Source: Octopus sinensis (taxonomy: Eukaryota). Taken from it: a stretch of DNA of 64,000 bases. The stretch lies in the NCBI RefSeq assembly GCF_006345805.1, contig NC_043003.1, positions 20,522,001 through 20,586,000 on the forward strand. Direction: 5' to 3'. A program made the translations under genes and the position numbers. Position 1 is the stretch's first letter. Each line of letters begins with the position of its first letter. The notes under the pieces were generated by a model that ran no database searches, had not been told where the DNA came from, and worked only from the letters and a program-made list of their open reading frames with translations. Below are positions 14,250 through 55,530 of the stretch, piece by piece.

Positions 14250-15344
14250 TACATAGAAAACAACTGGAAGAGATATCTAGATGACTGTTTCATTCTTTGG
14301 CATAAAAATATAGAAAAACTCATAGAATTCCAGGAAATTTTAAACGGGCTGGACGTAAACATCCAATTCACGATGGAATATAGCCAGCAACAACTTCCCT
14401 TCCTCGATATCCTCATTAAGAAAGCTAATAATATAATAGAAACATACATATACTATAAGCCTACAGACTCTAAGCAATATCTTCCATTCAATTCATGCCA
14501 CCCCAGACACACCAGGATGAATATCCCCTTCAATCTAGCAAAAAGGATATGCACTATAGTCTCTAACGCAAACACCAGAGACACACGACCACAAGAACTA
14601 AAAGATACCCTTATCACCAGGAACTATCCACCTTCACTTATTGACAAGTGCATTCAACGTGCCCTTCAACTTAACATCAAGGAACTGAGACATCCCAAAT
14701 CAAAGAAAAACTTACAACCAAAAGCCTTACCATACATCTCCACACACAACCCTCTCAATAACGAAGCCTTCGGCACCATCCTCCACAACATACCCCTCCT
14801 AAAAAAAGACCACAGAATAAACACAATCCTCCAAACACATACGATCATAAAAAGCAAAAGACAGCCTAGATCCATGAAAAGTCTCCTAACACAAGCCCGA
14901 ATTCACTCTTCAACACAGAAGCCGACAGTAAAAAAATGTGGAAGACCCAATTGCGGGATATGCGACTATCTAATCGAGGGTTCTGAGTTCTCCTTCAAAC
15001 AGGGACAACGGTTTACAGTGAAAAGCAACTTCACATGTGCTTCGGAGAACCTAATATACTCACTAACCTGCTCCGGGTGTCAAGAGCAGTACATAGGCCA
15101 AACAAAAAATGGTTTGCGTAAACGAATGGCCCTGCACAGATCCCAGATAAAAATTCCCCAAAACACAAAAATAGCTTTTAGCCAACACATAGATACTTGC
15201 GCCAACAAAAAAACACCAAACTTCAGAATTTTCCCCCTCTACCAATTTAGGGACGATACAACCTCGAGACAACGAATAAGTAAAGAAAATCTCTTTATTA
15301 TAAAATACAGGCCACTTCTTAACGGGTCTACGACAAACAATTAA
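14250..15344 (+). CDS. Penelope RT (C-terminal part) and GIY-YIG endonuclease, partial ORF
   Basis: Frame is open from the (TA)n junction: NWKRYLDDCFILW, LPFLDILI, YYKPTDSKQYLPFNSCHP, CGRPNCGIC, NLIYSLTC..CQEQYIGQT..LRKRMALH. Confidence 0.88.
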   Translation, partial: YIENNWKRYLDDCFILWHKNIEKLIEFQEILNGLDVNIQFTMEYSQQQLPFLDILIKKANNIIETYIYYKPTDSKQYLPFNSCHPRHTRMNIPFNLAKRICTIVSNANTRDTRPQELKDTLITRNYPPSLIDKCIQRALQLNIKELRHPKSKKNLQPKALPYISTHNPLNNEAFGTILHNIPLLKKDHRINTILQTHTIIKSKRQPRSMKSLLTQARIHSSTQKPTVKKCGRPNCGICDYLIEGSEFSFKQGQRFTVKSNFTCASENLIYSLTCSGCQEQYIGQTKNGLRKRMALHRSQIKIPQNTKIAFSQHIDTCANKKTPNFRIFPLYQFRDDTTSRQRISKENLFIIKYRPLLNGSTTNN

Positions 15345-19862: not shown

Positions 19863-20054
19863 ATATACATACGCAAATATGTGTGTGTGTGTGTGTGTGT
19901 GTGTATACAAACAAAATTTTTTTTTCATATATACAAACATAAATATATATATATATATATAACATACATACATGCACGCATACATACCTTGTGCTACATA
20001 GGAATTAACTGTTTCAGTCTAATGTACTAATACTTTTTCTCTTCTATTTTGTAG

Positions 20055-21087
20055 AGAACTGAGGCTGAGCCTTGAATCCAGTGGAGAAATACTGGATTAT
20101 ACCCAAGACAGCAGCAATTATACTTTCCAAATATTAAATTTAGTCAAAGACCTAAAAGGGACAAAAATATGGAAATTTGTTGGAGCAGTCGATAATTTCT
20201 ATGTAAATTTAAGCACGGTGGCTGAACTTCCGGGTCGGCGGGAGAATGCTACGCACCGTTTTCGCAAACTTTATAGCATCATTACCAAAGTTTCACCACC
20301 ATTTATCATGCAAAAAGAGGCCTTTTCCGAAGATGGTGACTGCTATTCGTACGTGCCATGTGTTCAGGTAGCCAATGAAAGTGATGTTGATAATGCATTC
20401 GAAGACTACTTGCTTACTAATCGATACGATCATGACAAATTCAGTGTTTCTTGCTGCACAGGAGTGACCATAGATATCTTGGTCAAGCTGGCGACGGACA
20501 TGGAATTTGATTTCATCCTCTTCTTTCTCAAAGAACCTTTCGATGGAAACTACACGTATGATTCAGGAAGTTGGAATGACACGTTAATGTACCTGGAAGA
20601 TGACAGAGTCGATATAGTGGCAGGGCCGCTCAGTATAACAGTAGAACGGGTAAGGTATATCACATTCACTGAGGTGTATTTTTACACTGGCTTCTCCATG
20701 ATTACCATGAAGCGAGAGCGTGAAACTTCCATGGACGCCTTTCTAATGCCTTTTTCCGTGGAGGTATGGATCGGCATAGCGATAAGTGCCACAGTTACTG
20801 CCGTAGCAACATCATTGTTCGAGTGGAACAGTCCATTTGGACTCAACCCTAAGGGGAGAAAACGGGAGCGCAACTATACCCTTGGTTCAGCACTCACTAT
20901 GGTTTATTCAGTGCTTTTTGGTCATATTGTGCGCACCAAATCCCCTAAAAGTTGGCCAGGAAAAGTACTTCAGAACTTCTGGGCAGGTCTTGCAATTTTT
21001 ATGATTGCAAGTTACACTGCTAATTTAGCTGCATACCTGGCAGGCCGCTCCGAGCAGTCGGATTTACTAAACATAAATGATGAACGG
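20055..21087 (+). CDS. GRIN3-like: GluN3-like NMDA receptor subunit, large internal exon (end of ATD, S1, M1, M2, M3); partial gene
   Basis: Acceptor ttttgtag ends at 20054 and donor CGG|gtaagt follows 21087, with an open frame throughout (ELRLSLESSG...DLLNINDER). Motifs DIVAGPLSITVER (S1), FEWNSPFGLNPKGRKR (human GluN3A YEWKSPFGLTPKGRNR, recalled), VLFGHIV (pore), SPKSWPGKVLQNFW and ASYTANLAAYLAG (M3). Confidence 0.93.
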
Positions 21088-21784
21088 GTAAGTAACTTTT
21101 TATACTTTCTATGTCTCTCAACCATACTCCATAAAAACTAAAAAAAAAAGCTTCCGCATATTCACCAGCTTCTGTAATAAAAAATTCTATACTCTCTTCT
21201 CCAAGTTAAAATGTCCCATCACAGACTATTTTTGAACTTCATTTTCTCACTGTGAATTTAATACCTATAAATACAAAGGTTTCAAAGCTCCATATTACTC
21301 ATCTGGATTCATAAATTTTAAATAGTTTTACCGTTTCTATCGATATTCTTTAATTTTTGTATCTGCGTGTGGTAGGATCTGAAGAAAGTCATGGCCATTT
21401 TAATGTGTACATTTCTTATTAAATACCATCCCTGCACTTAACAACAAGAAAACGCGAATAAAGCACTCGAGATATAACGAAAAAAACAAGTAAACAGATA
21501 AACACTCTCACTTCTGGTCCATAGGTCTGCTGTCTTCTCTCTATGCCTTTTCTTTGGGTGGAAGTGGCTCTTCACCCCTCGTAGTCCTCATCTCGCACCC
21601 TCTCATCACCCTTGTTGTGTACAACCCATCAGGCTTCCACAGTAATTAACATGTCCATTCTTTTTTTCCGTTTCCACAACACCGATGCTCTTGAATTCCC
21701 TCGCCTGCATATACCTTTCTCAGGGATATTGACTTACGAAGTTCTCAAACTCACCGAACTACGAAATCCTTCAAAGGGCACATT

Positions 21785-22826
21785 CATACATACATACACA
21801 CACACACACACATACATACATACATACATACATACATACATACATACATACATACATACATACAAAAATGCCCTGTTATTGATGTTGAAATTCCAATGAA
21901 GGAGCCCTGGATCTAGTAAGAAACTGACTCTCTATTAGCAAGAAATCTTGAAAACTTTACACACACACATACATAAATATATACATACATACATGCATAC
22001 AAAAATACAAACATATATGCATACAAACAGACATGCATACATACATACAAACATACAAACATACATAAGTACAAACATACATACAAACATACATACAAAC
22101 ATATATGCATACATACAAACATACATACATACATGTACACATACATACATACATACAAACAGACATACATACTTACATACATACATACACACATACATAC
22201 AAACATACATACATACATACATACATACATGTATACATACATACATAAATATGTACTACATACATACAAGCATACATACATACATACAAATATGCATACA
22301 TACAAACATACATACGTACATACATACATACATACATACAAAAATGCCCTGTTATACATACATGCATACATACATACATACAAACGTACATACGTACGTA
22401 CATACATACATACATACATACTACATACATACATACATACATACATACATACATACATACATACATACATACATACATGCATACATAAATCAACTGACTC
22501 GCAAACTACAAAATCAACCAAATTTAAATAACTCGCACATTACAAATACAATCCGTAAGTGGAACAATAAAACTATGCAAGGCTTTTTGCAGGTTTAGAA
22601 TGTGACGTTGACATATATACACGCATATGTTTATATACATGTATGTATGTGTGTGTGTGAGAGAGAGAGAGAGAATATGTATGTATGTATGTATGTACGT
22701 ACGTACGTACGTACGTATGTATATATGTATGTATGTATGTACGTACGTACGTACGTATGTATGTATGTATGTATGTATGTATGTATGTATGTATGTATGT
22801 ATGTATGTATGTATGTATGTATGTAT
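21785..22826. repeat. Long (CATA)n/(TATG)n arrays
   Basis: Direct inspection. Confidence 0.95.
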
Positions 22827-23246
22827 TAATACTTATTCAAATCGAATGTCTCATTTCGTCGCTACAACGTGTTTCCCATCCTTTGTATTTCACAGCACCA
22901 ATTCGCTTTAGTCGCTAATTTAAGACGAAAAAATAAAAACATTTAATATTTTTTTGTAATGATTGGCGCAAGAAGTTGAGGCTGGCGTGAGAATAAGACA
23001 GAAATAGACTATTGAAAAGGTGTAAAGGGAAAAGTGCAAGAAATATTAAGAAAGAAAAATGGCGAAGAGAATAACAGCGAGAAGCGTGAAAGGAAAGAAA
23101 CAAACAAACATACACAGGATTGGACGAGAAAGATAAACGGAGAAGTTGAGAAGAATTTGGAATATATGTGTGTTGTATGGTATTATCTTAGAGTATAGGA
23201 AGAATAAGTAAAGTGTTCGAAAGGATGAAACGGGATAGATAAATAG

Positions 23247-23390
<144 letters not shown>

Positions 23391-24614
23391 AAAGGAGAGA
23401 GTGAGGAGAGAGAGAGAGAGAGGATAGATAGATAGATAGATAGATCTGTTTGTGCATTGTTTCCACATCATATAAAACTTTTTCAGTTCTTACTCAAAAC
23501 TTCACCAGGAGACATGCATACATGTGTATGTATACACGTACCTACTTATATATGTATGTATAAGAATACATGTATGTGTAGATCGATACATATATATATA
23601 TATATGTGTACGTTTGTGTGGCGGAGGAATCTTATGTAGAAAGTTCGATGGATAGATGGATGGGTAGATGGAGGGACTGAACGATGGATGGATGTACAAA
23701 TAGAGAGATAAAACGATTCAGTAAAACATTTCAAAGCGATTGAGAGATTGAGAGGAATTGAATGCGGAGGCTGAAAATACGCAATGAAAAAAGTATGTAA
23801 GTGCAAAGAGAACAGTAACCCACAGAGAGATAAACAACGAAAAAAAGGAAAAGATTGAGAAAAAGGAAAAAGCAAGGGAAAAAGTTGAAAGGTGTAAGAA
23901 AGTAATGTTGAACAAAATTATATTAACTCCACTAATTTAATTTTCATCGAAACTGTAATTGAGCACGAATTATTCAATTCATTAACCTAATCATACATCT
24001 AACTAGCTGCACGTTAACATATTTATCTTTAAAAATTTGTGCCTATTCGTCAAGGTATTTTACTCGTATTGTAATCTAGTTTTATGCATTTACTTTATCA
24101 AACTACCGACATATTGTTTACTTACATCTGACTATTTATTTAACCCTAACTCGCAAAATGCATGTGTGGCATGGATCAGTATGCATACACTGGCGCACAC
24201 ACACATACATACATACATACATACATACATACATACATACATACATACATACATACATACATACGTACGTACATATATATGTACGTACACTCATGCGCGC
24301 ACTCGTTCCTAAACACAAATATGAAGACAAACATAAGTATATAAAGATAGAAATTCCTATATGAATGTTTACGTTTGTATGTATGTATTCATGTATCTGT
24401 CTGTCTGTCTATCGGTCTATCTATCTGTCTGTCTATCGGTCTATCTATCTGTCTGTCTGTCTATCTATCTATACATTTTCTCATTCCTTTCTCTCGAAGT
24501 GCGTGGGCTTGAAATGTCAAAAACTTTTCCAATTTTCCTGAGCGTTAAACTAATACTCATTACTTGTTGTTTCCTCACCTATCTGTGTCTTTTGTTTTTT
24601 GTACAATTTTGAAC

Positions 24615-24649
<35 letters not shown>

Positions 24650-24654
24650 ATATA

Positions 24655-24697
<43 letters not shown>

Positions 24698-24759
24698 ATA
24701 TATATTATATATATAATATATATAATATATATATATTATATACATACATACATACATAC

Positions 24760-24795
<36 letters not shown>

Positions 24796-24949
24796 TAGAT
24801 AGATAGATACTAGATAGATAGATAGATTTATGTTTCAAGTCTACGCTCTTCTACAGAAAGGGACACAGAAAAAACAAGGAGAGAAACAAGGTGAGAAAAA
24901 AATGTGTGTATTGGCTAACGATCTATCATGGCGACTGACTGCCGGACAG

Positions 24950-25110
24950 AAGGTGGCCAAGTGGCAGAATCGATAGCGCGGCGAACAAAATTCTGAGCGG
25001 CATTTCATCCGTATTTGGTTCAAATTCCACTCTGGTCAACTTTGTCTCACATTCTTTCGCGATCGATAAAATATGTCAGTTGAATACTGAGGTGGATGCA
25101 CTCGACTAAC
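24950..25110 (+). mobile_element. Degenerate family A SINE
   Basis: gtggcagaatcgatagcg...ggttcaaattccactctggtcaactttg. Confidence 0.6.
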
Positions 25111-25159
25111 ACGCTCTCCTGAAATTACAGACCTTGTTCTTATTGTAGAAGGAATATAT

Positions 25160-25490
25160 GAGACCCCCTTCGGTCATAACCGACCATGTGATTGCACCTA
25201 GAAAGTTACCCTCCAAGGAACAAGTCCGAGCAAGGTTGGAAGACCAGCAGTCGCCCATACATACCAGCTTCCCCTCTCTGTGCCACCAGTGTTATCTAAG
25301 GGAAAAGCAAAGGCTACAAAGCTTGGCACCGGTGACGTCACAGCTCATTTCTACAGCTGAGTAAACTGGAGCAACGTGAAATAAAGTGTCTTGCTCAAGA
25401 ACACAACACGCAACTCGGTCCGGGATTCGAACTCACAACTTCACGATCATAAGCTCGACGCTCTAACCACTGAGCCATGCGCCTTCACAG
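25160..25490 (-). mobile_element. tRNA-derived SINE, family C
   Basis: Reverse complement has A box TGGCTCAGTGGTTAG and B box GTTCGAATCC, then gtgttcttgagcaagacacttt; homologous to 48037-48335. Confidence 0.85.
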
Positions 25491-25517
25491 AAAGAATATA
25501 TAATAAATATATACTCT

Positions 25518-25760
25518 TTTACTCTTCTACTTGTTTCAGTTATTTGACTGTGGCCATGCTCGAGCACCGCCTTTAGACGAGCACATCGACCCCAGAACTT
25601 ATTCTTTGTTAGCTTAGTAATTAATCTATCGATCTCTTCCGCCGAACTGCTAAGTTACGGGGACGTAAACACACCACCATCGGTTGTCAATCGAAGTTGG
25701 GGGAACAAACACAGACACACAAACATATACACACACATACATATACACACACATACATAT

Positions 25761-25812
<52 letters not shown>

Positions 25813-25990
25813 TATAGATATATATATATATAATATACATACATATACATATATACGCCGAGCTTCTTTCAGTTTCCGTTTACCAAATCCACTCACAAGG
25901 CTTTGGTTGGCCCGAAGCTTTAGTAGAAGACACTTGCCCAAGGTGCCACGCGGTGGGACTGAACCCGGAACTATGTAGTTCGTAAGCAAT
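25518..25990 (-). mobile_element. tRNA-derived SINE, family B
   Basis: Same consensus as 12285-12675 with an expanded internal CA/TA repeat. Confidence 0.85.
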
Positions 25991-26585
25991 AGTTATATGT
26001 TTATTTATTTATTTTTTACCGTTTGTTTACACGATAACGGAGCAAATGTATTGTTCTGAAAAGCCAAAGTTGCAGAAACTCCGATGATCTAGTCAGGTTC
26101 TTTTAAAAAAATGTATAGACATGCAATCCAAAAAAATTGTACTAATGTATTCATATAAAAAAAGAAACACTCACACGTGCACAGACACCCACACACTCAC
26201 ACATACACACACACATATCCTCACACACATACACACACATATTCACACATACACAAGCTCACACACACACACGCACACATACACACACCCTCACACACTC
26301 ACATACTAACGCATACACTCACACACTCACACATACACTCACACACTCACACATACACACACTCATACATACACACATACATACATACACATACTCACAC
26401 ACACATACATGCACATACACACAAACATACACACACACATATATACTAGCACATTCACATATATACACGTTACTTTATAAGTAATCCTAAAACTTTTTCT
26501 AAGCTTCAATATTTATCTTCTGCCCCTGTATATGCCTGCTTACACTATCATTTTTTTTTACAATTGTAGTAGTAGTAGTAGTAGT

Positions 26586-26623
<38 letters not shown>

Positions 26624-26869
26624 AGAAGGTAAAAAGAAACAATTAACCGTTAACGTGTTCTGGCGAAACGAAGAGTGGGAGAGAATACAAATGATAGCTC
26701 GGAGATATGTAAATGAAAACGTACTTATACATTCTCAGAAATTCTTTAACGCGTGCCGCGTGGATTGAATTTTTACCTTACTTTCAATATTTTGGCATTA
26801 ATATACGCGTGCGCGAGTGTCTGTTTGTGTGCGTGTGTGCCCATATGTATATATACATATATGCATACA

Positions 26870-27280
<411 letters not shown>

Positions 27281-27500
27281 GTAGGCACACGAACACATAC
27301 ACACATATATATAGTTCGAAGCACATATATTAACCAAAAATATATATCATATCACAGTTGTACACAATTGTATTTTTGCTAACGTGCCGTCTTTCTAGAA
27401 GTGCAGCTTAAGGTGTCTTTACACAGAAACTAAACAAGTGAACATCGATATCAAATATATCACACACACACACACATGTATAATATATATATATATAATA

Positions 27501-27555
<55 letters not shown>

Positions 27556-28275
27556 TGTATGTATGTCTATATGAAGTATGTTTACACCCTATATACCCTA
27601 TCTGGCGTAGGAGTAGAGTAAGTGATATGAAAAATCAGCAATATTTTGTAATATTAACATTCCTTGTGGGTGTACAAACTTAAGTGCGTGTAAATAAAAC
27701 AGAGTTTTATCTAATCTTAGAGCAATTCATGTAGGTATTAGTTTTTCTTTAAAATACATGTAGAATGTACTCTCAAGCATGAAGTCTTAGAAAGCGAGAA
27801 TGAAATTTACGATGTAAAACAGACCTATTAATATATTACTTCATATAGCACAACATTGTAAAATAATAAATAAAAATGACTCAATGAAAATAAAAATAAC
27901 ATATTGAATTTGAAATAAAAGTATATTGAGGGATAAGAATATTTATAAGCGTATGCGTCAGCGTGTAAACGCGGGAACGTGTGTGTGTGTGTGTGTGTGT
28001 GAATGCTCGTGTATTGAAGAGCGGTGTTTTTACTTATAAAAAGAAGGGTATTTAATCTAATATTTACACGCTATTATTTATAGCTTTGTTTGCTTGGAGT
28101 TTCACAGGTCCAAAGCAGAATGTGTATTATGTATACATGTATGTATGTATGTGTATGTTGTATGTATGCATGAATGTATATATGTATGTATATACATACT
28201 TATATGTATATAATATATACGTATATATCAAAATGAATAAATACATACATAGACATAGACATACATACACCACGC

Positions 28276-28316
<41 letters not shown>

Positions 28317-28387
28317 CATATATATATATATTATATATATATTATATATATTATATATATTATATATATATATATATATATATTATT

Positions 28388-28429
<42 letters not shown>

Positions 28430-28574
28430 TAAGTAGTTGAATTGAATTATCCTAGTATGGATAATTCGGTTAACCGATACCCGGGTAGCAAATTCACGTC
28501 AGAAAAACACTGTTGAAGCTACTGCCAAGGGCAAGATTACATGGCTTTCGTGTGGAAATTTGTGTTTTTTTTAA

Positions 28575-29566
28575 TACAAATAAATGAAAGAATGGAGTTG
28601 AACGACGATTTAACAAATTCCTTTATTCTCGACATATGTTTCGAAGACTGCATATTCCTAATTCCGAAGGAATAAGGAGTGCATTATGCCGCCTTCTCAT
28701 CAGGAAAGACAAGGAACTTATGTCAGCATCATGATGAACAAAAACTTTTAGATGACTGCCCACACGGAGTCCATAGCGATAATGAGGTGTTTCTTAAAAT
28801 ATTCCGTGTAGGCAGTGACGTCAAAAATGGTGAATGTAGAATATTCTAGAAAGTTCAAGAGTCAAACAAGGTTGGAAGGGGAGAGATCTAAGAATAGGAA
28901 GGTGACAGGGTCCAAGTCATATGAATGGTGATGTTGTTGTTGGTTGCTTTTTCTAATGAGATTGAGTGCCTATGTGGGTGTATGTATACAACTGCATTCG
29001 TGTGTCTATGTGTGTGTATGTGTGTGTGCGTGATTGTGTGTGTGGATGGGTAGATGTCAAAAAAATATTGGTGAAGTGACAGGGTTTGTGTCTGTGTGTT
29101 TGATTGTGCTTACGATAGAGAGAGGGAGAGAGAGAGAGAGGAGGGAGAGTAGAGAGACAAAGGTAAAATATACCCCAACGAATTAGGTAGTAGTCCTTCA
29201 TGAGTATAAAAATTTGTCTATGGTGGTGTTGTATAAGTGGAACCAAATTATTAAATTCAAGGAGGTTATCTATATTAATCATCATTCATATGAGTGAAAG
29301 GTGTGTTTCTGCCAGTGCATGCAACCATTGTATTTACTAAAGGGAATTTGGCGAAAAGTATATGGAAAAGTTCGGAATTACAGACGCCACAAAACTTTCT
29401 GCCCTTATCAAACGGAAAGGATACAGACAATATGGACCATTCCAGCTTGAAAGTTATATTGCTGTCCTTTAAGGACGCCAAACTAATTTACTTAGTCCTG
29501 TGCTTTGTTGTTTTCTCTTATCTCGGAAAGTTGAATAATGATTGGAAATCTCTGGGATAATTTAGA
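28575..29566 (-). mobile_element. Penelope-like element 3' part (GIY-YIG C-terminus, 3' UTR, pLTR), running into the gap
   Basis: LKDSNITFKLEWSIL...FDKGRKFCGVCNSELFHIL matches the Penelope endonuclease C-terminus; terminal hammerhead present. Confidence 0.75.
28618..28714 (-). ncRNA. Type I hammerhead ribozyme with intact catalytic core
   Basis: Minus strand ctttc-CTGATGA-GAAGGCGGCATA...TATGCAGTCTTC-GAAA-CATATG-TC-gaga: G10.1-C11.1 pair, palindromic stem III and GUC triplet (28633-28631). Confidence 0.8.
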
Positions 29567-29666
29567 NNNNNNNNNNNNNNNNNNNNNNNNNNNNNNNNNN
29601 NNNNNNNNNNNNNNNNNNNNNNNNNNNNNNNNNNNNNNNNNNNNNNNNNNNNNNNNNNNNNNNNNN
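29567..29666. other. Assembly gap (100 N)
   Basis: Run of exactly 100 N, a typical placeholder for a gap of unknown size. Confidence 0.99.
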
Positions 29667-30039
29667 GACAGACTGATCTTTAAAGGAGAAGAATTTGATT
29701 TCCTCCCCGAATCAATAACATTGATCAGCTGCTTATAAGACAATCATAAATTAGGCTAGCACCGTGGTAAATGATATAATTTCCATATTGACATTTTGAT
29801 GGCTTGTCATTAAGTAATGTATGCAGAGAACAGTATAAATTAGAAGAACTCGAATTTAAACACTATAAAATGTTGCAATGGATTAAACAAGAATATAAAC
29901 ATATTGTATGCTACATTTGATTGGAAAGAAGAGGTGGTGCGGATCACTTGACGGCTGTATCCACACTTATTGACTGTTGTGTACGTCAAGATGTTAAGTC
30001 GTGCGTCAAAACGTCAAGACGCTCGTAGCTTCAATAAAC

Positions 30040-30475
30040 AGCAACTACCAACCACCTGATTATAGGTCAGTTGGAAGGGCCACTCTTGCGGTTCAAAGGC
30101 AAAAAGAAAGACAACTTGAAGCGATGCAACATTTCCTTTTCTTCCCTGGAAAACAAAGCATCAGAACGCAGGATCTTGCGGCCGGATGTCCTGCTTTTCC
30201 TCAGTTCAACGATTTGAGCAATGTCGACTCCAGCATTGGGACTAACTTCGTGCAAGCATGAAGGCAAGCTGGTAAAACCCTTCCCGTAAATGGAGACCTT
30301 CCTCTTTTATGACACGAAACAAAGCAGGCCTTGCAGTCCACTCTCAAGAAACCACATAGTTAATGATCCACAGGCACTCGAGCAAACTAACTCCTCAACT
30401 TGTTCCATTTGCCAAAAGGTTTGCAAGGCAGCAGCAGGACCCAAAAAACACATTTGTGTCCATAGAATATGATTA
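30040..30475 (+). mobile_element. RTE-type LINE 3' relic
   Basis: GPLLRFKGKKKDNLKRCNISFSSLENKASERR followed by the C2H2-like CSICQKVCKAAAGPKKHICVH. Confidence 0.65.
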
Positions 30476-30544
30476 CTGTTCCATCCTACTGCGTCGTCAT
30501 TTGTTGCTCACGACGAGAGAATCCATCATATATATAAATGTAAC

Positions 30545-30748
30545 CGCGTGTGTACAGTTCGCGAATTATTTTTCACCGTCTTCCCTTCTCTTGATTTTTC
30601 CTTTTCCTATGTTTCTGGCGAAGAGCTCCGCTCGAAACGTAAGACCCTCCTTCTTCCTTTCCTTCCTGAGCGTCCAATAATACTATATTTGTTCCACGTC
30701 CTCGCGTTGTTGTGTTTTCTCTTTGTGTTTTCATGTTTGGATTAACTA
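30545..30748 (+). mobile_element. ~200-bp hammerhead-bearing element, copy 2
   Basis: gttt-CTGGCGA-A-GAGCTCCGCTC-GAAA-CG-TA-agac at 30611-30645; ends tgtttggattaacta(TA)n. Confidence 0.75.
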
Positions 30749-30793
30749 TATATATATATAAAATATATATATATATACATACATACATACATA

Positions 30794-30835
<42 letters not shown>

Positions 30836-30884
30836 TATATATATAATATGGATATATATACATATATATTCTTCTTTCTTGGTC

Positions 30885-31300
30885 TAGCCGTTGTCCGTGC
30901 AACATTGATATTTCTCTCTGTGTTTGTGAAATCTTGTATCCCTGCTGTATGGCTTCATTTCCACATACGCCAGCTTAATTTAATTCGTCTTTAATCGAAA
31001 TACACCTGTTGTTATGTCCTGTTATTATTTTTATTGTATTTTATTTTATTTGTGTAACATTGTCCGTTTTTTCCGTCCTTGTTTTTGTATACATTCGCTG
31101 CTTTCTTCCAAGGAATCTAATGCTCTTAGATTAGTTTTTGCTTGGGCCTGGCCAGATTGGAGCAATCTCAAGTATAATCAGCCGAAATTGCGAAGATAAT
31201 CTGGTACTTGACTGAGGAAAGAAAACTTCGAATGACCCGTCATTGTTTTCTTTGTATCGTCTATCTGGATGTTTTGTCGTCCCATTTTGTATTTTTATAT
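30885..31300 (+). repeat. Dispersed repeat, inverted homologue of 42660-42960
   Basis: cttcatttccacatacgccagcttaatttaattcgtc...tgctcttagattag...gccagattggagcaatctc matches the reverse complement of 42660-42960. Confidence 0.75.
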
Positions 31301-31313
31301 ATGTGTGTGTGTA

Positions 31314-31438
<125 letters not shown>

Positions 31439-32699
31439 CAGATATAGAAAGATAGATAGATATAAAAATAAATAAATAGCTAGATACATATATATATATA
31501 CATACAATCATATGTATAGTATATATATATATATTATAATATATATATATAATATATATATAATACACATATATATATATACATATATATATATTGTGAG
31601 TGCGTGTTTTTATATACATTATATATATTATATATAGTCATCAAATGTCTGTTTATGCTCATATCACAATGTATGTATTTGTAAGCCTGATTAAGGCTAA
31701 CTGTATTAGAAATGATAAATCGTTAAACCAACTATGAATACAAATTAGACAGATCTATCTCTATATACCTCGATGTTATTTATTGAGGTCAGGTGTTAAT
31801 CAGAAGTTATTTAGCTTCCATTTTGACTCTTTCACTATGTTTTTTTTTTTTTATTATCCTGATTGTTTAAGCTTTATCTCATTTGAGATATAACCTAGAG
31901 GGATATGTTTTTGTAAAGTTATTCATAGATTTGTAAGTTCTGTAATTTAGATGTGCAACAATTTTGTGAACTATCTACGCTTTTTAAGACAACATCTCGG
32001 AGATGTAATTGCCAGACAAGTGATTTGATCTGAGAGCGTGTTTTGGAATTGAAGCGTTTGCAGCCTGGAAGATTCATATTAGCCATTCAAATCACACAAA
32101 GACTGTTAGCTTCACTTAAAGTTTATTATTAAATGTCAAAATTTTCATCACAGAAACTGCAACCTGCTTTGAATTGTGGCGAGATGATTATCTCCCTGTA
32201 ATAGCCTTGACCAATAGAGAGACGACGTGTGAATATAAGATCGGTTATATCGCTTTCTTGGGCTGAAATGTATATAAATAAATAAAAATTATCTGAATAT
32301 GATTTCAGGAGTCCTGGTGGAATCGATATCAGACAGAAATCTTTTGAAAGTTTGCATATTTTTCCATTGCAGCTGTTTTTCAGATATGGATACAATTAGA
32401 CAAATGCAATATACGAAGAGAAAAAATGCTCCCAAATTACAAACGAAAATAGATAATTCAAAGGAAATAACAGAAAATTTTCTGGAAAATAGTAGCAAAG
32501 GAAACATTAGCATAAAACCGAAAATAACGGCAGATTTTCAAAGAAATGCACGTTAAAAAGTGAAAGGGAGAGGGAAAGGTAGAAAAAAGAAGGAAAGGGA
32601 GAGAGGGAGGTGAAATAAATAAGTGAAAGAAACATTAGCATTGCTCCACGCAGAAACTGCAGAAGTTACTCAGAGGTTTTGCAAGCTTTTCTAAATCCA

Positions 32700-33042
32700 T
32701 TGTAATGCTGGAAATCTTTCCGCATCGTCAGCCGATATCTCAAAGTCATAAGTGTTTCACCATTTAGCCTGTAAGCTTTAGCTGACTGGGGACAGTGAGG
32801 GCGGAGCTAGTCTTCACCTACGGAAGGGTTTCACTTGCGGTCTCTTATCAACCATAGGCAGTTTGAGCAACTTTCAGCTACGAACTTAATTCCTGATTGC
32901 TTCAAGTTGTCTAGGTTCCAGACCTATCTTCTGCAAGAAATAGTGCACTGATCTAGATGGAAAGCCGTGGAAGCCGACTTCAATGGAGAATGGGGTCGCA
33001 TGCCAGCCCTTGACAAAAGCTTCATCGACTAAGTCCTGAAAC
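32700..33042 (-). mobile_element. HERO-like (REL) non-LTR retrotransposon 3' relic
   Basis: QDLVDEAFVKGWHATPFSIEVGFHGFPSRS..FLQKIGLE resembles the KYxELV...GW...EVGCRGF REL C-terminus. Confidence 0.6.
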
Positions 33043-33339
33043 ATTAATATGATAAATAAATATGGAATCAAATTAATAAATACAAAGAAAATGTATTGGC
33101 TTTTTAAAACTCCTATTGTTTAATAGAGGACTGTCCTAATATGTGTTACTGCTGCTGCTGCTACTACTGCCACTACTTCCGCTGCCGTTGTTGTTATTGT
33201 TATTTAAGCCACTGGTCAGTATCGATTGAGGGGACATACGAACAAAGGCTTTCTAACCTTGACCACCAACACGTCTCTTTATATACCCGAGAGTACACTA
33301 TACAATATGCACTTTTTTCTTAATACAGTAACACGTATT

Positions 33340-33523
33340 ACTGAGATGTTCTTGCATAGCAAGTGATCTGATGTGAGATCGTGTGCTGGAACGAAAACAA
33401 TTGCAGCGTGGAAGGTGTTTATAAGCCATTTAAGAAACACACACAAACCGCAGCACGGAATTTTGTCAGTGAACAGGTCGCGGTCTCAAAGCAACGAAAA
33501 TATTTTGACAAATTAAATGTTGA
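33340..33523 (+). repeat. Dispersed repeat, rearranged copy of 38210-38407
   Basis: 5' half is colinear and 3' half inverted relative to the 38210-38407 copy. Confidence 0.7.
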
Positions 33524-34096
33524 GATAAAACGTAATTTGAGGTTTGATTGTTTTTAGTAAAAGGTGATATGAAGATTTGATGTTCATGCGTTTTGCATTG
33601 GCAATAATATGTTCAAACACAAATCGTCGTTGTTGTTGTTGTTTCTGCTATTATCGCTTCTTGTTATTTGGTCTCGGATCAACCCAGATCGCTCGTTTAC
33701 TAGGTCACATGATCTGCTAAACATAGCAGCTAAATCAGCTTCAAATCATGCCCAATCGACATTAAAAAGATTTTTTCCTGAAAAGAAACACGTATCAACT
33801 TTTGTGGACAAGTGTTTCTTATATCGAGACACCAAGCCTGGTTTATTCTCTAATGGAATCTCGATTCTAGAGAAGCCTAGATTCTGGGGGTTATATTTCC
33901 TTTCTCGTATAGTGCTGGTCTTAATTGCCATTCTGCAAATAGGAACACGTCCTCTTGAAGAACAAAGAATTTATGTCGTATGATACATAATATACCTATG
34001 CCACTTATTGCTATTTTTAAAACTTATTTATTAAGTTATTATATGTTGTGAGTGAGAGTGTGTTTATATGTGTATGTGTATATACATACATATATG

Positions 34097-34130
<34 letters not shown>

Positions 34131-34263
34131 TGTATGTATGTATGTATGTGGCATTATTCAGTTTATTTCAAGATTTCTTGCCAATAGAGAAAGAGCCAGT
34201 GTCCAACCTAGATCCAAGGCTCCTTCATTGGAACTTCTACATCAACAACCGTGTATGCATATG

Positions 34264-34336
<73 letters not shown>

Positions 34337-34379
34337 TATATATTCTGCCGGGGTCTCTTTCCATTCACAAGTTCCTCGT

Positions 34380-34625
34380 ATAGCATTGCTTAGGGATCCT
34401 ACCATTCTTCGTTCTAATAAGTTGTCCAGTCCAACGTAACCGATGCTTGTGCACCATTGCCTCAATAATCAAGATATCAGCTGTCCTCAGGTCCTGTGTG
34501 TCTGTAATTTTTTGAAACTTTGTCTGCATTGTTTGCAGTCGTGTATCCTTGTCAAGAGCAGAGATCATTAGCCAGGAATGGAGCCGCAAATGTAAAATAT
34601 AAGTTAGTCCTATAGCGCACAATGT
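34380..34625 (-). mobile_element. RTE-type LINE fragment
   Basis: ADILIIEAMVHKHRLRWTGQLIRTKNGRIPKQ matches the RTE post-RT RLRWxGHxxRMxxxRxPK motif. Confidence 0.7.
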
Positions 34626-34671
34626 TCCTGAAGGTCAGCAATGGTCTTCCACGGTCACGAATGGACGGCCG

Positions 34672-34705
<34 letters not shown>

Positions 34706-34710
<5 letters not shown>

Positions 34711-34912
34711 TAATCCAAACAAGAAAACAAAAACAACAACGCAAGGACGTGGAACAAATAAAGTATTATTGGACGCTCAGGAAAGAAGGGAAGAAGGAGG
34801 GTTTGACGTTTCGAGCGGAGCTCTTCGTCGGAAACATAGGAGAAGGAAAGATCCTGAGAAGGGAAGACAGGGGAAAAAATCGCTAGTGATACAGACGAGG
34901 TCACATTATAAA
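34706..34912 (-). mobile_element. ~200-bp hammerhead-bearing element, copy 3
   Basis: Minus strand gttt-CCGACGA-A-GAGCTCCGCTC-GAAA-CG-TC-aaac at 34835-34801. Confidence 0.75.
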
Positions 34913-35279
34913 CCCATATATACCTATGGTTGCGTTTTTGCAACGCAAAACCTGCCTCTGTTTGTTTGGATACGAACTTGCCGGAAAGCATCTGATAGAG
35001 CATGCGACAAGTTCAGTATTTAGTCGACACCCGTAGCTAACAGTTGCATAGTTCTTCTCTTCCAGATTGTGAAAGCTTACCATAACGTTTAATTTAAATG
35101 TAGTAAAAAATTTTATGGGAAGATATTGGTTAAATTAGAAGTAGCTCTCTAATAATGTAAAAACCACCGATGTCATATACTTAATGTATGTATTTTGTTT
35201 ATGTGCTTATCCCGCAGACAATAAGCTCATAAACAAAACGCATAAACAAAATTAAGTACGAGACATTGCTTAAATGTTC

Positions 35280-36660
35280 GTCAAATCGTCTTTACAAGCC
35301 TTGCAGGGTCTGTGCTTTTCTGGCGACGGCAAGCGGTAGTTGAACATAGAGCACTGTAAAACCACGTGGCACTGCATCAGATACGCTAAATATTCTGGTT
35401 GTCCACTTCCGGGAATTTACAGACGCACACGCATGGATGAACACATGCAAAAACATATGCAAACACACCTATACACACTAACAGCCACAGAGGCCATCAA
35501 GTACAGAGATTCCAATAACACAAAAGTAGCAGGAGCCGGCATTGGAATTTGCACGTGTAAGAAGTGGAGTGCTGTCAGCGAGTTGCAGGTAGTAGAGGAA
35601 CGGTTGGGGCAGAGGGCTCTGTTTGGAATTGTAATCATAGGGCGATCAGGCCTGGGCTACTTCCCAGCCTTCCAGATTGGAAGCGCTAAAGGGAAAGAGC
35701 GACAGTATCTACTCCAAGTACGCGTAGAAATAGCATGCGTTAGCTGGATGATGGGACAAGGAGCCTGGACAAGGTGGGCCTATATACAGCGGCGGAACAT
35801 TACCTATATCTGATATTTGGTGGATTACATCCAGCATATCAGATTTCTGGTCTAGGGTGTTGACGACCCTTTAACAAGTCCAACAAACCTTCATATATGA
35901 GGCAAGAGTAAAACGACGTCCTGTCCATTATGGATCGAAAGTGTTCCTTCAACGTTACACCAGCTGCCTCAGAGTTTTAGCCGATGGTCACTACTGTTGG
36001 TGACATAACCAGGTGCTTAGGGCGATTGCGGAGGTGATATCGATAGGTATTCGATCCAGTAAGTACCATCCCAAGAAGGAGGTGATCCCTTTTCTATGAG
36101 CCGAAAAGAAGACCAGTCCACTTAAACTTCAACGACTACCATAGCTACTTTCCATAGCCCCTCAACGGCAGATTACATCGTACCAGCAACACTCCGCCCA
36201 CACATAGTGATCTTCTCAAATTACACCAAACAGGTGATCGTGTGGGAACTGATTTACCCTAAGAACTGACTGTACAATGAGATGACTCATGAGAAGAAGC
36301 TTGCCAAATACCAAGAGCTGGTAGAATACTGCAGAAATCGAAGAAGGCCTGCATATTGCGAGGTAACTGAGGTGGGCTGTCGAGCTTTTGTGGAGCGTTC
36401 GTTCTGCAGGGCATTGACTGGACTTGGAATTACTGGAGGAGAGCTATAAATTTCATCAGTGAAGCTGCAGAGACGGCTTTGGATATAGAAGGCAGACCAG
36501 ACGTTTGGTGCTGTTGTGATGGCAACATGGGGCTTGAGCAACTCCAGCTGAATCTACAGGGTGATGGGGGTCTGATGCTGAAAGATCCAAAACTACCTAA
36601 GTGAAACCTGGGAAACATCACTGACAGTACGTCTCGGAGTATCCGCGCAATATCTCCTAA
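35280..36660 (+). mobile_element. Degraded HERO-like (R2-group, REL) non-LTR retrotransposon
   Basis: GRSGLGYFP...KGKERQYLLQ...QGAWTRW...SPTNLHI.GKS..TSCPL and EKKLAKYQELVEYCRNR...EVGCRAF...ALTGLGITG...FISEAAE; multiple stops and frameshifts. Confidence 0.7.
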
Positions 36661-36692
36661 AAATCAATCAATAAATCAATCAATCTATCCAT

Positions 36693-36761
<69 letters not shown>

Positions 36762-37098
36762 CGTATGTCTGTCTGTCTGTTTCTTTATCTTTCCATCTCA
36801 CTCTCTCTCTCTTTCTGTATATATGTATATATGTGTGTGTGTGAGTGTGTGTGAGTATATATATATATATATATATACACATACGTAATACATATGAACT
36901 TGATAAATGGATAGATTGATTGATTTATTGATTGATTTTTAGGAGATATTGCGCGGATACTCCGAGACGTACTGTCAGTGATGTTTCCCAGGTGTCACTT
37001 AGGTAGTTTTGGATCTTTCAGCATCAGACCCCCATCACCCTGTAGATTCAGCTGGAGTTGCTCAAGCCCCATGTTGCCATCACAACAGCACCAAACGT
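36501..37098. repeat. 197-bp inverted duplication (1 mismatch) around a microsatellite spacer
   Basis: 36501-36697 equals the reverse complement of 36902-37098 except gtgaAacc/gtgaCacc. Confidence 0.92.
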
Positions 37099-37119
37099 AA
37101 TACATACATGGATGCATAC

Positions 37120-37150
<31 letters not shown>

Positions 37151-37159
37151 CATAAAATT

Positions 37160-37316
37160 TGATACTGATTAGAAGATCGAAAATCCACCTGAAGATTGTC
37201 GGAGCAGACATGAAACATTTGTAGTGGCGGTTTATTTAATTTATATTAAAATTTATGTATTGATTAAGTCTTTCCTTGTTTGGTTTTAAAATAGTGGTTT
37301 TGTCTCGAATTATATT

Positions 37317-37320
<4 letters not shown>
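37160..37320 (+). mobile_element. Short (TA)n-flanked element with a minimal hammerhead motif
   Basis: ccac-CTGAAGA-ttgtc-ggagca-gacat-GAAA-catttg-TA-gtgg at 37185-37227; homologous to 43550-43812. Confidence 0.7.
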
Positions 37321-37373
<53 letters not shown>

Positions 37374-37498
37374 CATATATACATATATAATGCACAGCAC
37401 GACACGTCAGTTTGGATTATGTCTTATTTTATCTTACTGTTTATATATATATATATATGCAATTGTAATTGTAATTCACGTGTATTTTGTATTTGCAG

Positions 37499-37649
37499 AT
37501 CAAACGAACTTGATGTATTTATACACGACACATATCTCCTAAAATTTGCCATTTCTCGGCTTGATGATAATTGCGCAATTTCCTTTGCTGGAGATAGCTT
37601 CGGTGAAGATGGGTATGCGTTCGGTCTGAAGAAGGGCTCAAAATTAATG
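37499..37649 (+). CDS. GRIN3-like: GluN3-like NMDA receptor subunit, S2 exon
   Basis: atttgcag acceptor and ATG|gtaagc donor. Translates SNELDVFIHDTYLLKFAISRLDDNCAISFAGDSFGEDGYAFGLKKGSKLM, matching the iGluR S2 pattern LDAFIxD...C...F..GYG. Starts phase 2, ends phase 0. Confidence 0.9.
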
Positions 37650-45564: not shown

Positions 45565-45855
45565 AATCGGTTATCAGACAAAATATTGACGTATACGTCC
45601 AGTGGATTTATTGAAGGACTCACAAAAAAGTATTTTGCACATAAAGGATGTGATATGCAGAGGGCACACACGCTTGAGATAAAGTATGGTCCGCAACATA
45701 CGGCCGGGTTATTTGTTTTGCTCTTGGTAGCTGTTACCCTTTCAATCTTTCTTATGATGGGAGAATACGTTTTTTTCAAGTACCTTATTCCTGTTTTGAG
45801 GAAGAAGCCTGCCTGTAGTAAATGGAGAAGTATCAATATTATGTTTCTAAGTCAG
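45565..45855 (+). CDS. GRIN3-like: GluN3-like NMDA receptor subunit, exon for end of S2, M4 and proximal C-tail
   Basis: cattgcag acceptor and CAG|gtaaga donor. NRLSDKILTYTSSGFIEGLTKKYFAHKGC...AGLFVLLLVAVTLSIFLMMGEYVFFKYLIPVLRKK...LSQ; phase 0 matches the preceding exon. Confidence 0.92.
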
Positions 45856-54761: not shown

Positions 54762-54767
54762 CAGGGA

Positions 54768-55530
54768 TCACCAGTCCAGAAGCGCGGAAGCCTCGGTTAG
54801 AATTTCAAGATTAATTGCAGAGAAGACTCTACGTGGCAGCGAAGTAATCGTGGGCGTAGAAAAAGTTGCGTGCATGACGAACTTCAGGACCGCATGATCA
54901 CTCTTGGCAAGAGGGGCGCACACAGATACGTCTGACACTGATCTTGGATAGCGGGAGAATACCAGATCTAGCATAGATGGCTGCTGCCCAGACCGATGCC
55001 TTGTCGGATATTCAACATGTTGCGATAGAAAACAATCTTCAGCCACGTCAAGAAGGGCCTGGCCGAACCGGGAAGATGTTGTACAAATTGATGCGGGCCA
55101 ATCGATCGTGGGAGCGTTGAAGTCGCCTAGTACCAAGCAGTCATGCGAAGCTGAAACGAATCTTATCGCTTCGAGTAGATGAGCATCGTCCTGGGGGTCG
55201 GCAAGAGGCGGCCTGTAGACAGCCAACACGGGCAGGCAAAACTCAGATAGGCTCAGCTTGCAATAGACGGCATCGAATTTTGTTGTAGGTTGAGCATTTG
55301 TGGGTAGAATACCGCAGGACGGTTTGTGCTCAGACTTAACATACACAGCAACACCTCCACCTCGCCTTTTTCCTCTGTCACATCTGAAAAGGACGTAGCC
55401 CTGCAGGTGGATTTCTGAGTCCTTTACTGCTGGAGTCAGCCAAGTCTCGGTGAGTCACGTATGGCCAGTGTAAATAGTTCACTGAACTTTGGGAATAAGG
55501 AGCACGAGTTGGTGTAGACGATGCTGAGAT
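54768..55530 (-). pseudogene. CR1 apurinic-type endonuclease domain, disrupted
   Basis: IVYTNSCSL, then a frameshift before LTETWL...RCDRGKRRGGGVAVYVK, LVLGDFNAPTIDW, LDLVFS, SDHAVL. In-frame TGA at 54770-54768 before the RT ORF. Confidence 0.85.

What the first reader, a model, noticed from the sequence alone, without database searches (positions are those of the whole stretch)
20914..20931. GluN3-like pore reads Gly-His (GGT CAT), one A-to-I edit from the vertebrate Gly-Arg
Seen: M2 tip VLF-G-H-IV, with Gly at 20920-20922 and His CAT at 20923-20925. Known: GluN1/GluN2 have Asn at the N site, vertebrate GluN3 has Gly then Arg, this site controls Mg2+ block and Ca2+ permeability, and coleoids recode neural mRNAs heavily via ADAR. 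Inference: editing A20924 gives CGT (Arg), a Q/R-like switch in an NMDA subunit; unedited His could make the pore pH-sensitive. The C-A-U neighbour context is not an optimal ADAR site.
Basis: partly seen in the sequence, partly recalled or inferred. Interest (0 to 1): 0.75.

Follow-up and report, generated by a model that had tools for sequence, protein, structure and literature searches.

The report
Octopus GluN3 pore: ancestral Gly-His
The octopus GluN3-type NMDA-receptor gene does read Gly-His at the tip of its pore. That histidine is the normal, ancient residue of invertebrate GluN3 subunits, and the one published editing table I could search lists a different site, a Lys-to-Arg edit that probably lies 72 bases upstream.

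Summary
Window 20911-20931 reads V-L-F-G-H-I-V, inside a 1033-bp exon (20055-21087, + strand). The exon encodes the end of S1, then M1, M2 and M3, of the Octopus sinensis/vulgaris-type "NMDA 3A-like" subunit. Gly-His aligns to the Gly-Arg of vertebrate GluN3A.

His at N+1 is not special to coleoids:
- It is present in 94 of 99 aligned sequences (98 homologues plus the window exon), including gastropods, bivalves and an annelid; none has Arg.
- It is present in all cephalopods seen (four Octopus sequences, Argonauta, Sepia).
- It is present in three hemichordates.

So His is the ancestral bilaterian state and Arg is the vertebrate novelty. Every His codon is one A-to-G change from Arg, so that point is generic.

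A published O. bimaculoides table of recoding sites (at least 10% editing, at least 2 samples) lists one site for a gene annotated NMDA 3A-like, taken here as the orthologue. It is K266R, AAG to AGG, at 84%. It most likely maps to window A20852 in the M1-M2 loop, where Argonauta encodes Arg genomically. No H-to-R site is listed. RNA folding and synonymous-site conservation add no significant support. Low-level or conditional editing of A20924 remains untested.

The parts
20055..21087 (+). Exon of the GluN3-type (NMDA 3A-like) subunit: end of S1, then M1, the M2 pore loop, M3 and the start of the M3-S2 linker. It corresponds to aa 339-682 of O. vulgaris CAI9725348.1 / O. sinensis XP_029638855.1.
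   Evidence: 100% identical to P0143. tblastn.
20764..20826 (+). M1 transmembrane helix (VWIGIAISATVTAVATSLFEW).
   Evidence: Alignment to GluN3A structures. Coordinates from the codon table.
20851..20853 (+). Lys codon AAG in the M1-M2 loop (FGLNP-K-GRKRERN). This is the probable site of the published K-to-R recoding edit (A20852, context A-A-G), reported at 84% in O. bimaculoides.
   Evidence: Zhang et al. 2023 Table S5-1. Mapping by offset: aa 604 minus 265 gives aa 339, the first full codon of this exon. Argonauta encodes Arg here. The mapping is inferred.
20881..20940 (+). M2 re-entrant pore loop (LGSALTMVYSVLFGHIVRTK).
20920..20922 (+). N-site Gly (GGT).
20923..20925 (+). N+1-site His (CAT).
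   Evidence: His is conserved in homologues.
20965..21045 (+). M3 helix with the gate motif SYTANLAAY.
37499..37649 (+). Downstream exon of the same gene, part of S2 (SNELDVFIHDTYLLKFAISRLDDNCAISFAGDSFGEDGYAFGLKKGSKLM).
   Evidence: tblastn. Splice sites read.
45565..45855 (+). Downstream exon of the same gene: end of S2, M4 (GLFVLLLVAVTLSIFLMMGEYVFF) and the start of the C-terminal domain.
   Evidence: tblastn. Splice sites read.
29567..29666 (.). Assembly gap of 100 N inside the intron. It probably hides the exon for aa 683-725 of the O. vulgaris protein, which is absent from the window.

Best explanation
The exon encodes the channel core of the octopus orthologue of the GluN3 (NMDA 3A-like) receptor subunit. 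Its pore-loop tip carries Gly at the N site and His at N+1.

Shown: Gly-His (or Ser/Gln/Met-His) is the standard genomic state of GluN3-type subunits in cephalopods, other molluscs, annelids and hemichordates. The vertebrate Arg is therefore the derived residue.

Inferred, by analogy with NR3B mutagenesis (PMC2974739): the N-site Gly removes the Asn that coordinates Ca2+/Mg2+ and so lowers Ca2+ permeability. The residue at N+1 tunes Mg2+ block. An imidazole there would act as a partly protonatable or metal-binding group instead of a fixed positive charge.

The His codon is most likely read as His in nearly all transcripts. The recoding recorded for this gene in Octopus is a different one: K to R at about 84%. 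It most probably lies at window A20852 in the cytoplasmic M1-M2 loop.
For: Identity: the best solved-structure match is GluN3A at 6e-48, against 2e-32 for GluN1, with matching Pfam domains. The exon is 100% identical to XP_029638855.1, 'NMDA 3A-like', of O. sinensis.

Conservation of the N/N+1 pair:
- In the 99 aligned sequences (98 homologues plus the window exon) the pair is GH 58, QH 29, MH 7 and GN 5, and none has Arg.
- Named taxa include Sepia pharaonis, Elysia, Mactra, Solemya, Lottia, Lymnaea, Candidula, Capitella, Magallana and Gigantopelta.
- In the unbiased scan of 1.84 billion representatives, about 82 GluN3-type entries have His. Arg occurs in about 19 vertebrate-motif entries and only two invertebrate-type ones.
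- Saccoglossus, Ptychodera and Glandiceps read SH.
- All cephalopods seen read VLFGHIVRTKSPKSWPGK.

Editing: Table S5-1 of PMC9989829 lists only K266R (AAG to AGG, 0.84, 4 samples, Lig_chan domain) for the O. bimaculoides gene annotated NMDA 3A-like. Its criteria are at least 2 samples, depth of at least 10 and level of at least 0.1. The offset fits AAG at 20851-20853 if the gene model starts at this exon. Argonauta has genomic Arg there.
Against: The held copy of that table was truncated, although the neighbouring rows are present. The link between that gene model and the window gene, and the mapping of K266R to 20852, are both inferred from the annotation and an offset, not from coordinates.

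In the octopus minimum-free-energy fold, A20924 pairs with U20877 in the same imperfect hairpin as A20852. ADAR bound there could touch it. Octopus and Sepia share an unusually conserved 51-nt stretch around the His codon, 48 of 51 nt identical. The functional role of His is pure inference.
Confidence: 0.83

Rival explanations
1. ADAR edits A20924 (CAU to CIU) at a physiologically meaningful level. This converts His to Arg and switches the pore to a vertebrate-like Gly-Arg state, analogous to the GluA2 Q/R site.
For: The codon allows it. Coleoids recode heavily, and the squid GluN3A homologue has cumulative recoding of 0.8-1.7 in some tissues. In the octopus fold, A20924 is base-paired in the same hairpin as the probable 84% K-to-R site. 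The strongest synonymous-conservation window of the exon overlaps the M2 tip.
Against: No H-to-R site is listed for the gene in the O. bimaculoides high-confidence table, although a site placed 72 nt away was called in 4 samples. His is fixed in taxa that do not edit heavily, so the codon is not an editing adaptation. No cephalopod has hard-wired Arg. The C-A-U context is suboptimal. The predicted partner of A20924 differs between octopus and Sepia, and the base is unpaired in the consensus fold. Hairpin z-scores are about 0. The conservation peak is not significant after scanning, P = 0.21.
Confidence: 0.05
2. A20924 is edited only at a low level (below 10%), as a by-product of ADAR acting on the nearby K-to-R substrate, with no functional consequence.
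For: The shared predicted hairpin 20852-20880 / 20920-20946. Most coleoid recoding is reported to be low-level and non-adaptive, as stated in PMC9989829.
Against: There is no direct evidence. The hairpin is no more stable than shuffled sequence. The sequence context is poor.
Confidence: 0.12

Closest known systems
Vertebrate GluN3A/GluN3B (GRIN3A/GRIN3B), glycine-binding NMDA receptor subunits
   Same: Best sequence match (6e-48). Gly at the N site. The FG-x-T..K.PK.W motif after the pore tip, the SYTANLAA gate, and the ATD-LBD-TMD architecture in the full-length octopus orthologue.
   Different: N+1 is His, not Arg. M3 ends in AAY rather than AAV. Function, partner subunits and agonist are untested in any mollusc.
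Invertebrate GluN3-type orthologues (for example Magallana gigas XP_065923291.1, Saccoglossus kowalevskii NMDA 3A-like, Argonauta hians NMDA 3A-like)
   Same: The same G/S/Q-His pore tip and flanking motif. The window gene is an ordinary member of this group.
   Different: Cephalopods read His-Ile-Val where the other homologues examined read His-Thr-(Val/Ile/Thr), His-Leu-Val or similar. Octopus and Sepia have Lys (and Argonauta Arg) where most other homologues have Trp in the NP-W-GRKR loop.
GluA2 (GRIA2) Q/R-site editing by ADAR2
   Same: The position is in the same pore-loop tip region. A single A-to-I change would introduce Arg.
   Different: For GluA2 the edit is documented, nearly complete, and driven by an intronic complementary sequence. 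Here no edit is documented, no complementary sequence was found, and the unedited residue is conserved in animals that do not recode heavily.
Octopus bimaculoides NMDA 3A-like K266R recoding site (Zhang et al. 2023, Cell Rep, Table S5-1)
   Same: Most probably the same gene (inferred from the annotation) and the same exon. The context A-A-G is optimal.
   Different: It is a Lys in the cytoplasmic M1-M2 loop, 72 nt upstream of the His codon, and not a pore-lining residue.

Membership tests
GluN3-class NMDA receptor subunit | Closer in sequence to GluN3 than to GluN1, GluN2 or AMPA/kainate subunits | tested here: met
   GluN3A chains at 6e-48 to 2e-46, GluN1 at 2e-32. NCBI names the identical protein 'NMDA 3A-like'.
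GluN3-class NMDA receptor subunit | iGluR architecture: ligand-binding S1/S2, M1, M2 re-entrant loop, M3 with SYTANLAA, M4 | tested here: met
   Pfam Lig_chan and Lig_chan-Glu_bd. SYTANLAAY. S2 and M4 exons. ANF_receptor is present in the full-length orthologues.
GluN3-class NMDA receptor subunit | Gly instead of Asn at the N site | tested here: met
   GGT at 20920-20922 aligns to the GluN3A Gly.
GluN3-class NMDA receptor subunit | Arg at the N+1 site (the vertebrate hallmark) | tested here: not met
   His (CAT at 20923-20925). His is the rule in non-vertebrate GluN3-type sequences, so this feature defines only the vertebrate subgroup.
GluN3-class NMDA receptor subunit | Binds glycine and assembles with GluN1 into channels with low Ca2+ permeability that are insensitive to Mg2+ | not testable with these tools
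   Needs heterologous expression.
ADAR recoding site (Q/R-like) | A in the genome and G in a reproducible fraction of cDNA | tested here: not met
   This was tested only indirectly. The O. bimaculoides table (at least 0.1 level, at least 2 samples) lists K266R but no H-to-R site for the gene annotated NMDA 3A-like. No reads were examined.
ADAR recoding site (Q/R-like) | Target adenosine lies in a stable, conserved double-stranded RNA | tested here: inconclusive
   A20924 is paired with U20877 in the octopus minimum-free-energy fold. The partner differs in Sepia and with the size of the folded region. The base is unpaired in the consensus fold. Z-scores are -0.34, +0.31 and +0.13.
ADAR recoding site (Q/R-like) | Favourable neighbours (5' U or A, not G; 3' G) | tested here: not met
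   The context is C-A-U. The preference rule comes from general knowledge of ADARs.
ADAR recoding site (Q/R-like) | Raised synonymous conservation around the site among coleoids | tested here: inconclusive
   12 of 16 codons are the same between Octopus and Sepia at the M2 tip, against a 39% background. The permutation P for the best window is 0.21.
ADAR recoding site (Q/R-like) | Edited state hard-wired as G in some relatives | tested here: not met
   All cephalopods seen encode His. By contrast, the position assigned to K266R is Arg in Argonauta.

The most novel reading that the evidence does not exclude
A20924 is edited conditionally, for example in the cold, in a particular ganglion, or during development. 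That would convert the ancestral Gly-His pore into a vertebrate-like Gly-Arg pore, so octopus would reach by RNA what vertebrates fixed in DNA. A more modest version is that the invariant His of invertebrate GluN3 makes these channels sensitive to protons or Zn2+ within the pore.
Probability: 0.05. Interest if true: 0.7.

Novelty: already known. Interest (0 to 1): 0.22.

Why it matters
As it stands, this is an ordinary, already annotated orthologue, and the proposed editing switch has no support.

Two small points are still useful. First, His rather than Arg is the ancestral N+1 residue of GluN3 subunits across Bilateria. The 'unprecedented Gly-Arg' of the vertebrate literature is therefore a vertebrate innovation, and invertebrate GluN3 pores may behave differently. 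I found no paper in the held library that discusses this. Second, the recoding recorded for this gene in octopus is a strong K-to-R edit, most likely in the M1-M2 loop, at a position where Argonauta already encodes Arg.

Tried and rejected
1. Looking for transcript-derived protein variants carrying Arg. The cephalopod entries whose 3' ends I could check (the Sepia cluster and P0290) are genomic or unspliced, because they read through into the intron. They say nothing about editing.
2. The window ORF is not on record by exact look-up. The word-index search also missed the Octopus cluster, which only the exhaustive scan found.
3. Liscovitch-Brauer 2017 is not held. The supplements of Shoshan 2021 and Albertin 2022 do not mention the gene. 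Alon 2015 gives only per-gene totals for squid.
4. Search for a complementary sequence. Inverted-repeat search found only a weak local palindrome centred on GTGCGCAC. Folds were inconsistent between species.
5. The synonymous-conservation peak at the M2 tip looked promising (binomial 0.003) but fails the scan-wide permutation test, P = 0.21.
6. O. bimaculoides DNA could not be fetched because the gene range is too long. K266R therefore could not be mapped by coordinates.
7. Searches of the window for upstream ATD exons, the aa 683-725 exon and C-terminal exons found none.

Full report
**Observation.** The window reads GTG CTT TTT GGT CAT ATT GTG (V L F G H I V) at 20911-20931. These codons lie in one long exon, 20055-21087 on the + strand. 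It is bounded by a polypyrimidine tract and an AG acceptor ending at 20054, and by a GTAAGT donor at 21088. The exon translation matches Pfam Lig_chan (4.8e-21) and Lig_chan-Glu_bd (3.1e-13).

Against all solved structures the best matches are GluN3A chains (6e-48 to 2e-46), well ahead of GluN1 (2e-32). The residue-by-residue alignment places 'ysvlfGHivrtkspkswpgk' on GluN3A 'yallfGRtvaikppkcwtgr' without gaps. So the His sits at the N+1 position, where vertebrate GluN3 has Arg.

**Identity of the gene and the organism.**
- An exhaustive phmmer scan of 1.84 billion representatives found a 711-aa protein that is 100% identical over the exon.
[quoted passage not shown] Its cluster also holds the O. 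bimaculoides (912 aa) and O. vulgaris (1343 aa, full-length) models.
- Two further exons of the same gene lie at 37499-37649 (S2) and 45565-45855 (end of S2 plus M4).
- The exon for aa 683-725 of the O. vulgaris protein is missing from the window, and a 100-N gap sits at 29567-29666. This probably explains why RefSeq splits the O. sinensis gene into two models.
- The first of those models ends in a 30-codon stretch read from intron sequence at 21222-21311.

**Is Gly-His special to coleoids? No.**
- In the 99 aligned sequences (98 homologues from the word-index search plus the window exon), the N/N+1 pair is GH in 58, QH in 29, MH in 7 and GN in 5. None has Arg.
- The named members include Sepia (Acanthosepion) pharaonis GRIN3A, the gastropods Elysia, Lottia, Lymnaea, Candidula and Gigantopelta, the bivalves Mactra, Solemya and Magallana, and the annelid Capitella.
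- In the unbiased top 150 representatives, about 82 GluN3-type entries carry His: GH 44, SH 27, MH 7, QH 2 and singles.
- Arg occurs in 18 GR entries and 1 RR entry. All but one carry the vertebrate motif 'CYAILFGRTV..K.PKCWTGRFLMNLWA'. Only two entries of invertebrate type have Arg, P0153 (one of the GR entries) and P0196 (AR).
- GluN1-type entries read NS and GluN2-type entries read NN, as expected.
- One SH representative is the GluN3A-like protein of the hemichordate Saccoglossus. Ptychodera and Glandiceps read the same 'ILFSHTVPTKSPKCW'.

His is therefore present in protostomes and in deuterostomes. It is the ancestral bilaterian state, and the vertebrate Arg is derived. Within cephalopods, four Octopus sequences (three named species and one unnamed octopod), Argonauta hians and at least two Sepia sequence variants share an identical 'VLFGHIVRTKSPKSWPGK'.

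Strictly, it refutes the idea that the genomic His is an editing-ready coleoid state. It does not prove that octopus never edits the codon.

**Evidence on editing.** No reads could be examined here. The cephalopod contigs whose 3' ends I could check (the Sepia cluster and P0290) read through the donor into the intron, so they are genomic or unspliced.

The literature gave two useful items.
- In squid, the GluN3A homologue is lightly recoded. It has one site in the giant fibre lobe. Cumulative recoding is 0.1 in the giant fibre lobe, 0.8 in the optic lobe, 0 in the vertical lobe, 1.7 in the buccal ganglion and 1.6 in the stellate ganglion. GRIK2 has 63 sites by comparison (PMC4384741 supplement).
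- In O. bimaculoides, Table S5-1 of Zhang et al. 2023 (PMC9989829) lists high-confidence recoding sites. The criteria are at least two samples, summed depth of at least 10 and mean level of at least 0.1.

[quoted passage not shown] The row reads KQ416802:230256, CDS position 797, AAG to AGG, K266R, four samples, level 0.839, domain Lig_chan. The next row is already on another scaffold. That this gene model is the orthologue of the window gene is inferred from its annotation and from the offset match below.

Among the AAG Lys codons of the window's three exons, one fits a natural model start. It is at 20851-20853, aa 604, in 'FGLNP-K-GRKRERN' of the M1-M2 loop. Subtracting 265 from 604 gives aa 339, the first full codon of this very exon. 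Its context, A-A-G, is optimal for ADAR. Argonauta encodes Arg at that position ('FGLNPRGRKRERNY'), which is the pattern expected when an edit becomes hard-wired in a relative.

I therefore place the documented edit at A20852, 72 nt upstream of the His codon. This mapping is inferred, at about 80% confidence. If it holds, the His codon lies in the same exon and the same gene model, and had comparable coverage. Its absence from the table then means less than 10% editing in those samples.

**RNA structure and constraint.**
- In Octopus, the minimum-free-energy fold of 20830-20970 is an imperfect hairpin. A20852 pairs with U20946 at its base, and A20924 pairs with U20877 in an inner helix.
- The hairpin is no more stable than shuffled sequence. 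Z-scores are -0.34 for the window, +0.31 for a second octopod and +0.13 for Sepia.
- The inner helix is lost in Sepia. The predicted partner of A20924 changes with species and with the size of the folded region. The base is unpaired in the two-species consensus fold.
- Octopus and Sepia share 48 of 51 identical nucleotides across 20911-20961. This includes a perfect 23-nt run starting at the His codon.
- The best 16-codon window for synonymous identity, 12 of 16 against a 39% background, overlaps the M2 tip. A permutation test gives P = 0.21 for seeing such a window somewhere in the exon. I treat it as a lead only. If real, it could equally serve the K-to-R site, because the conserved UCCCC block is its predicted pairing partner.

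**How it most likely works.**
- Shown: the subunit is a GluN3 orthologue with a Gly-His pore tip, which is the invertebrate norm.
- Inferred from mutagenesis of rat NR3B (Cavara et al. 2010, PMC2974739): the N-site Gly is the main cause of low Ca2+ permeability. Replacing the N+1 Arg with Asn creates Mg2+ block without raising Ca2+ permeability.
- By analogy, the octopus channel should also have low Ca2+ permeability. Its His would be a weaker, titratable substitute for the fixed charge of Arg, so Mg2+ block, pH sensitivity and transition-metal sensitivity could differ from vertebrate GluN3. None of this has been tested.

**Comparison with known systems and novelty.** The gene is a member of the GluN3 class by sequence, architecture and N-site Gly. 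It fails only the vertebrate-specific Arg criterion. It is not shown to be a Q/R-like editing site: of five criteria, three were not met and two were inconclusive. The gene is already annotated, and the motif is shared by dozens of invertebrate orthologues, so I rate it as already known.

A search of the held literature found no paper that discusses the invertebrate His. The polarity of the change, with His ancestral and Arg derived in vertebrates, may therefore be a small fresh point.

**Verdict.**
- Observation: confirmed.
- Identification as GluN3-like: correct.
- Editing-switch inference: unsupported, and disfavoured by conservation and by the one searchable editing table.
- Probability of meaningful H-to-R editing: about 0.05.
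- Interest: 0.22.

Noticed in passing
window 20851-20853 (A20852): AAG Lys in the M1-M2 loop ('FGLNPKGRKRERN'). It is the probable location of the published O. bimaculoides K266R recoding site (AAG to AGG, 84%, 4 samples). Argonauta hians encodes Arg here in its genome, and most other homologues have Trp.
   Followed up: partly
window 29567-29666, 21222-21311 and 21088-37498: A 100-N assembly gap lies in the intron. The exon for aa 683-725 of the O. vulgaris protein (LRTMQVATLEYGAAKYFLSKINPSLYNSLKMSVESIEEALQKLK) is absent from the window. The O. sinensis RefSeq annotation splits the gene into XP_029638855.1 and XP_029638856.1. The first ends in a 30-codon stretch read from intron sequence at 21222-21311.
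   Followed up: partly
window 20911-20961: 48 of 51 nt are identical between Octopus and Sepia, including a perfect 23-nt run CATATTGTGCGCACCAAATCCCC that contains the palindrome GTGCGCAC. This is the strongest synonymous-conservation window in the exon, but it is not significant after scanning (P = 0.21). The UCCCC block is the predicted pairing partner of AGGGGA at the K-to-R site.
   Followed up: partly
window 52761-55346 (- strand): A non-LTR retrotransposon. One ORF has an Exo_endo_phos_2 endonuclease domain (54768-55346, 1.5e-13). A 666-aa ORF has RVT_1 reverse transcriptase (52761-54761, 1.4e-31). The region has higher GC (0.45-0.47) than the rest of the window.
   Followed up: partly
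window 14373-15344 (+ strand): A 323-aa ORF with Cys-rich motifs (CGRPNCGICDY..., LTCSGCQEQYIGQT) and no Pfam match. It is possibly a fragment of a mobile element.
   Followed up: partly
P0153 and P0196 (representatives): Two GluN3-type proteins with invertebrate-style flanks (..KSPKSWPSK.. and ..KAPKSWPVK..) carry Arg at N+1 in the genome ('FGRMLL', 'SARNIH'). The His-to-Arg change has therefore happened more than once. Their source organisms are unknown.
   Followed up: no
whole window: Low GC (about 0.23-0.39 outside the retrotransposon) with very abundant microsatellites (TA/TG/CA-type, (TATG)n-like, poly-A/T). These produce many spurious long ORFs. The introns of this gene exceed 8-16 kb.
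   Followed up: no
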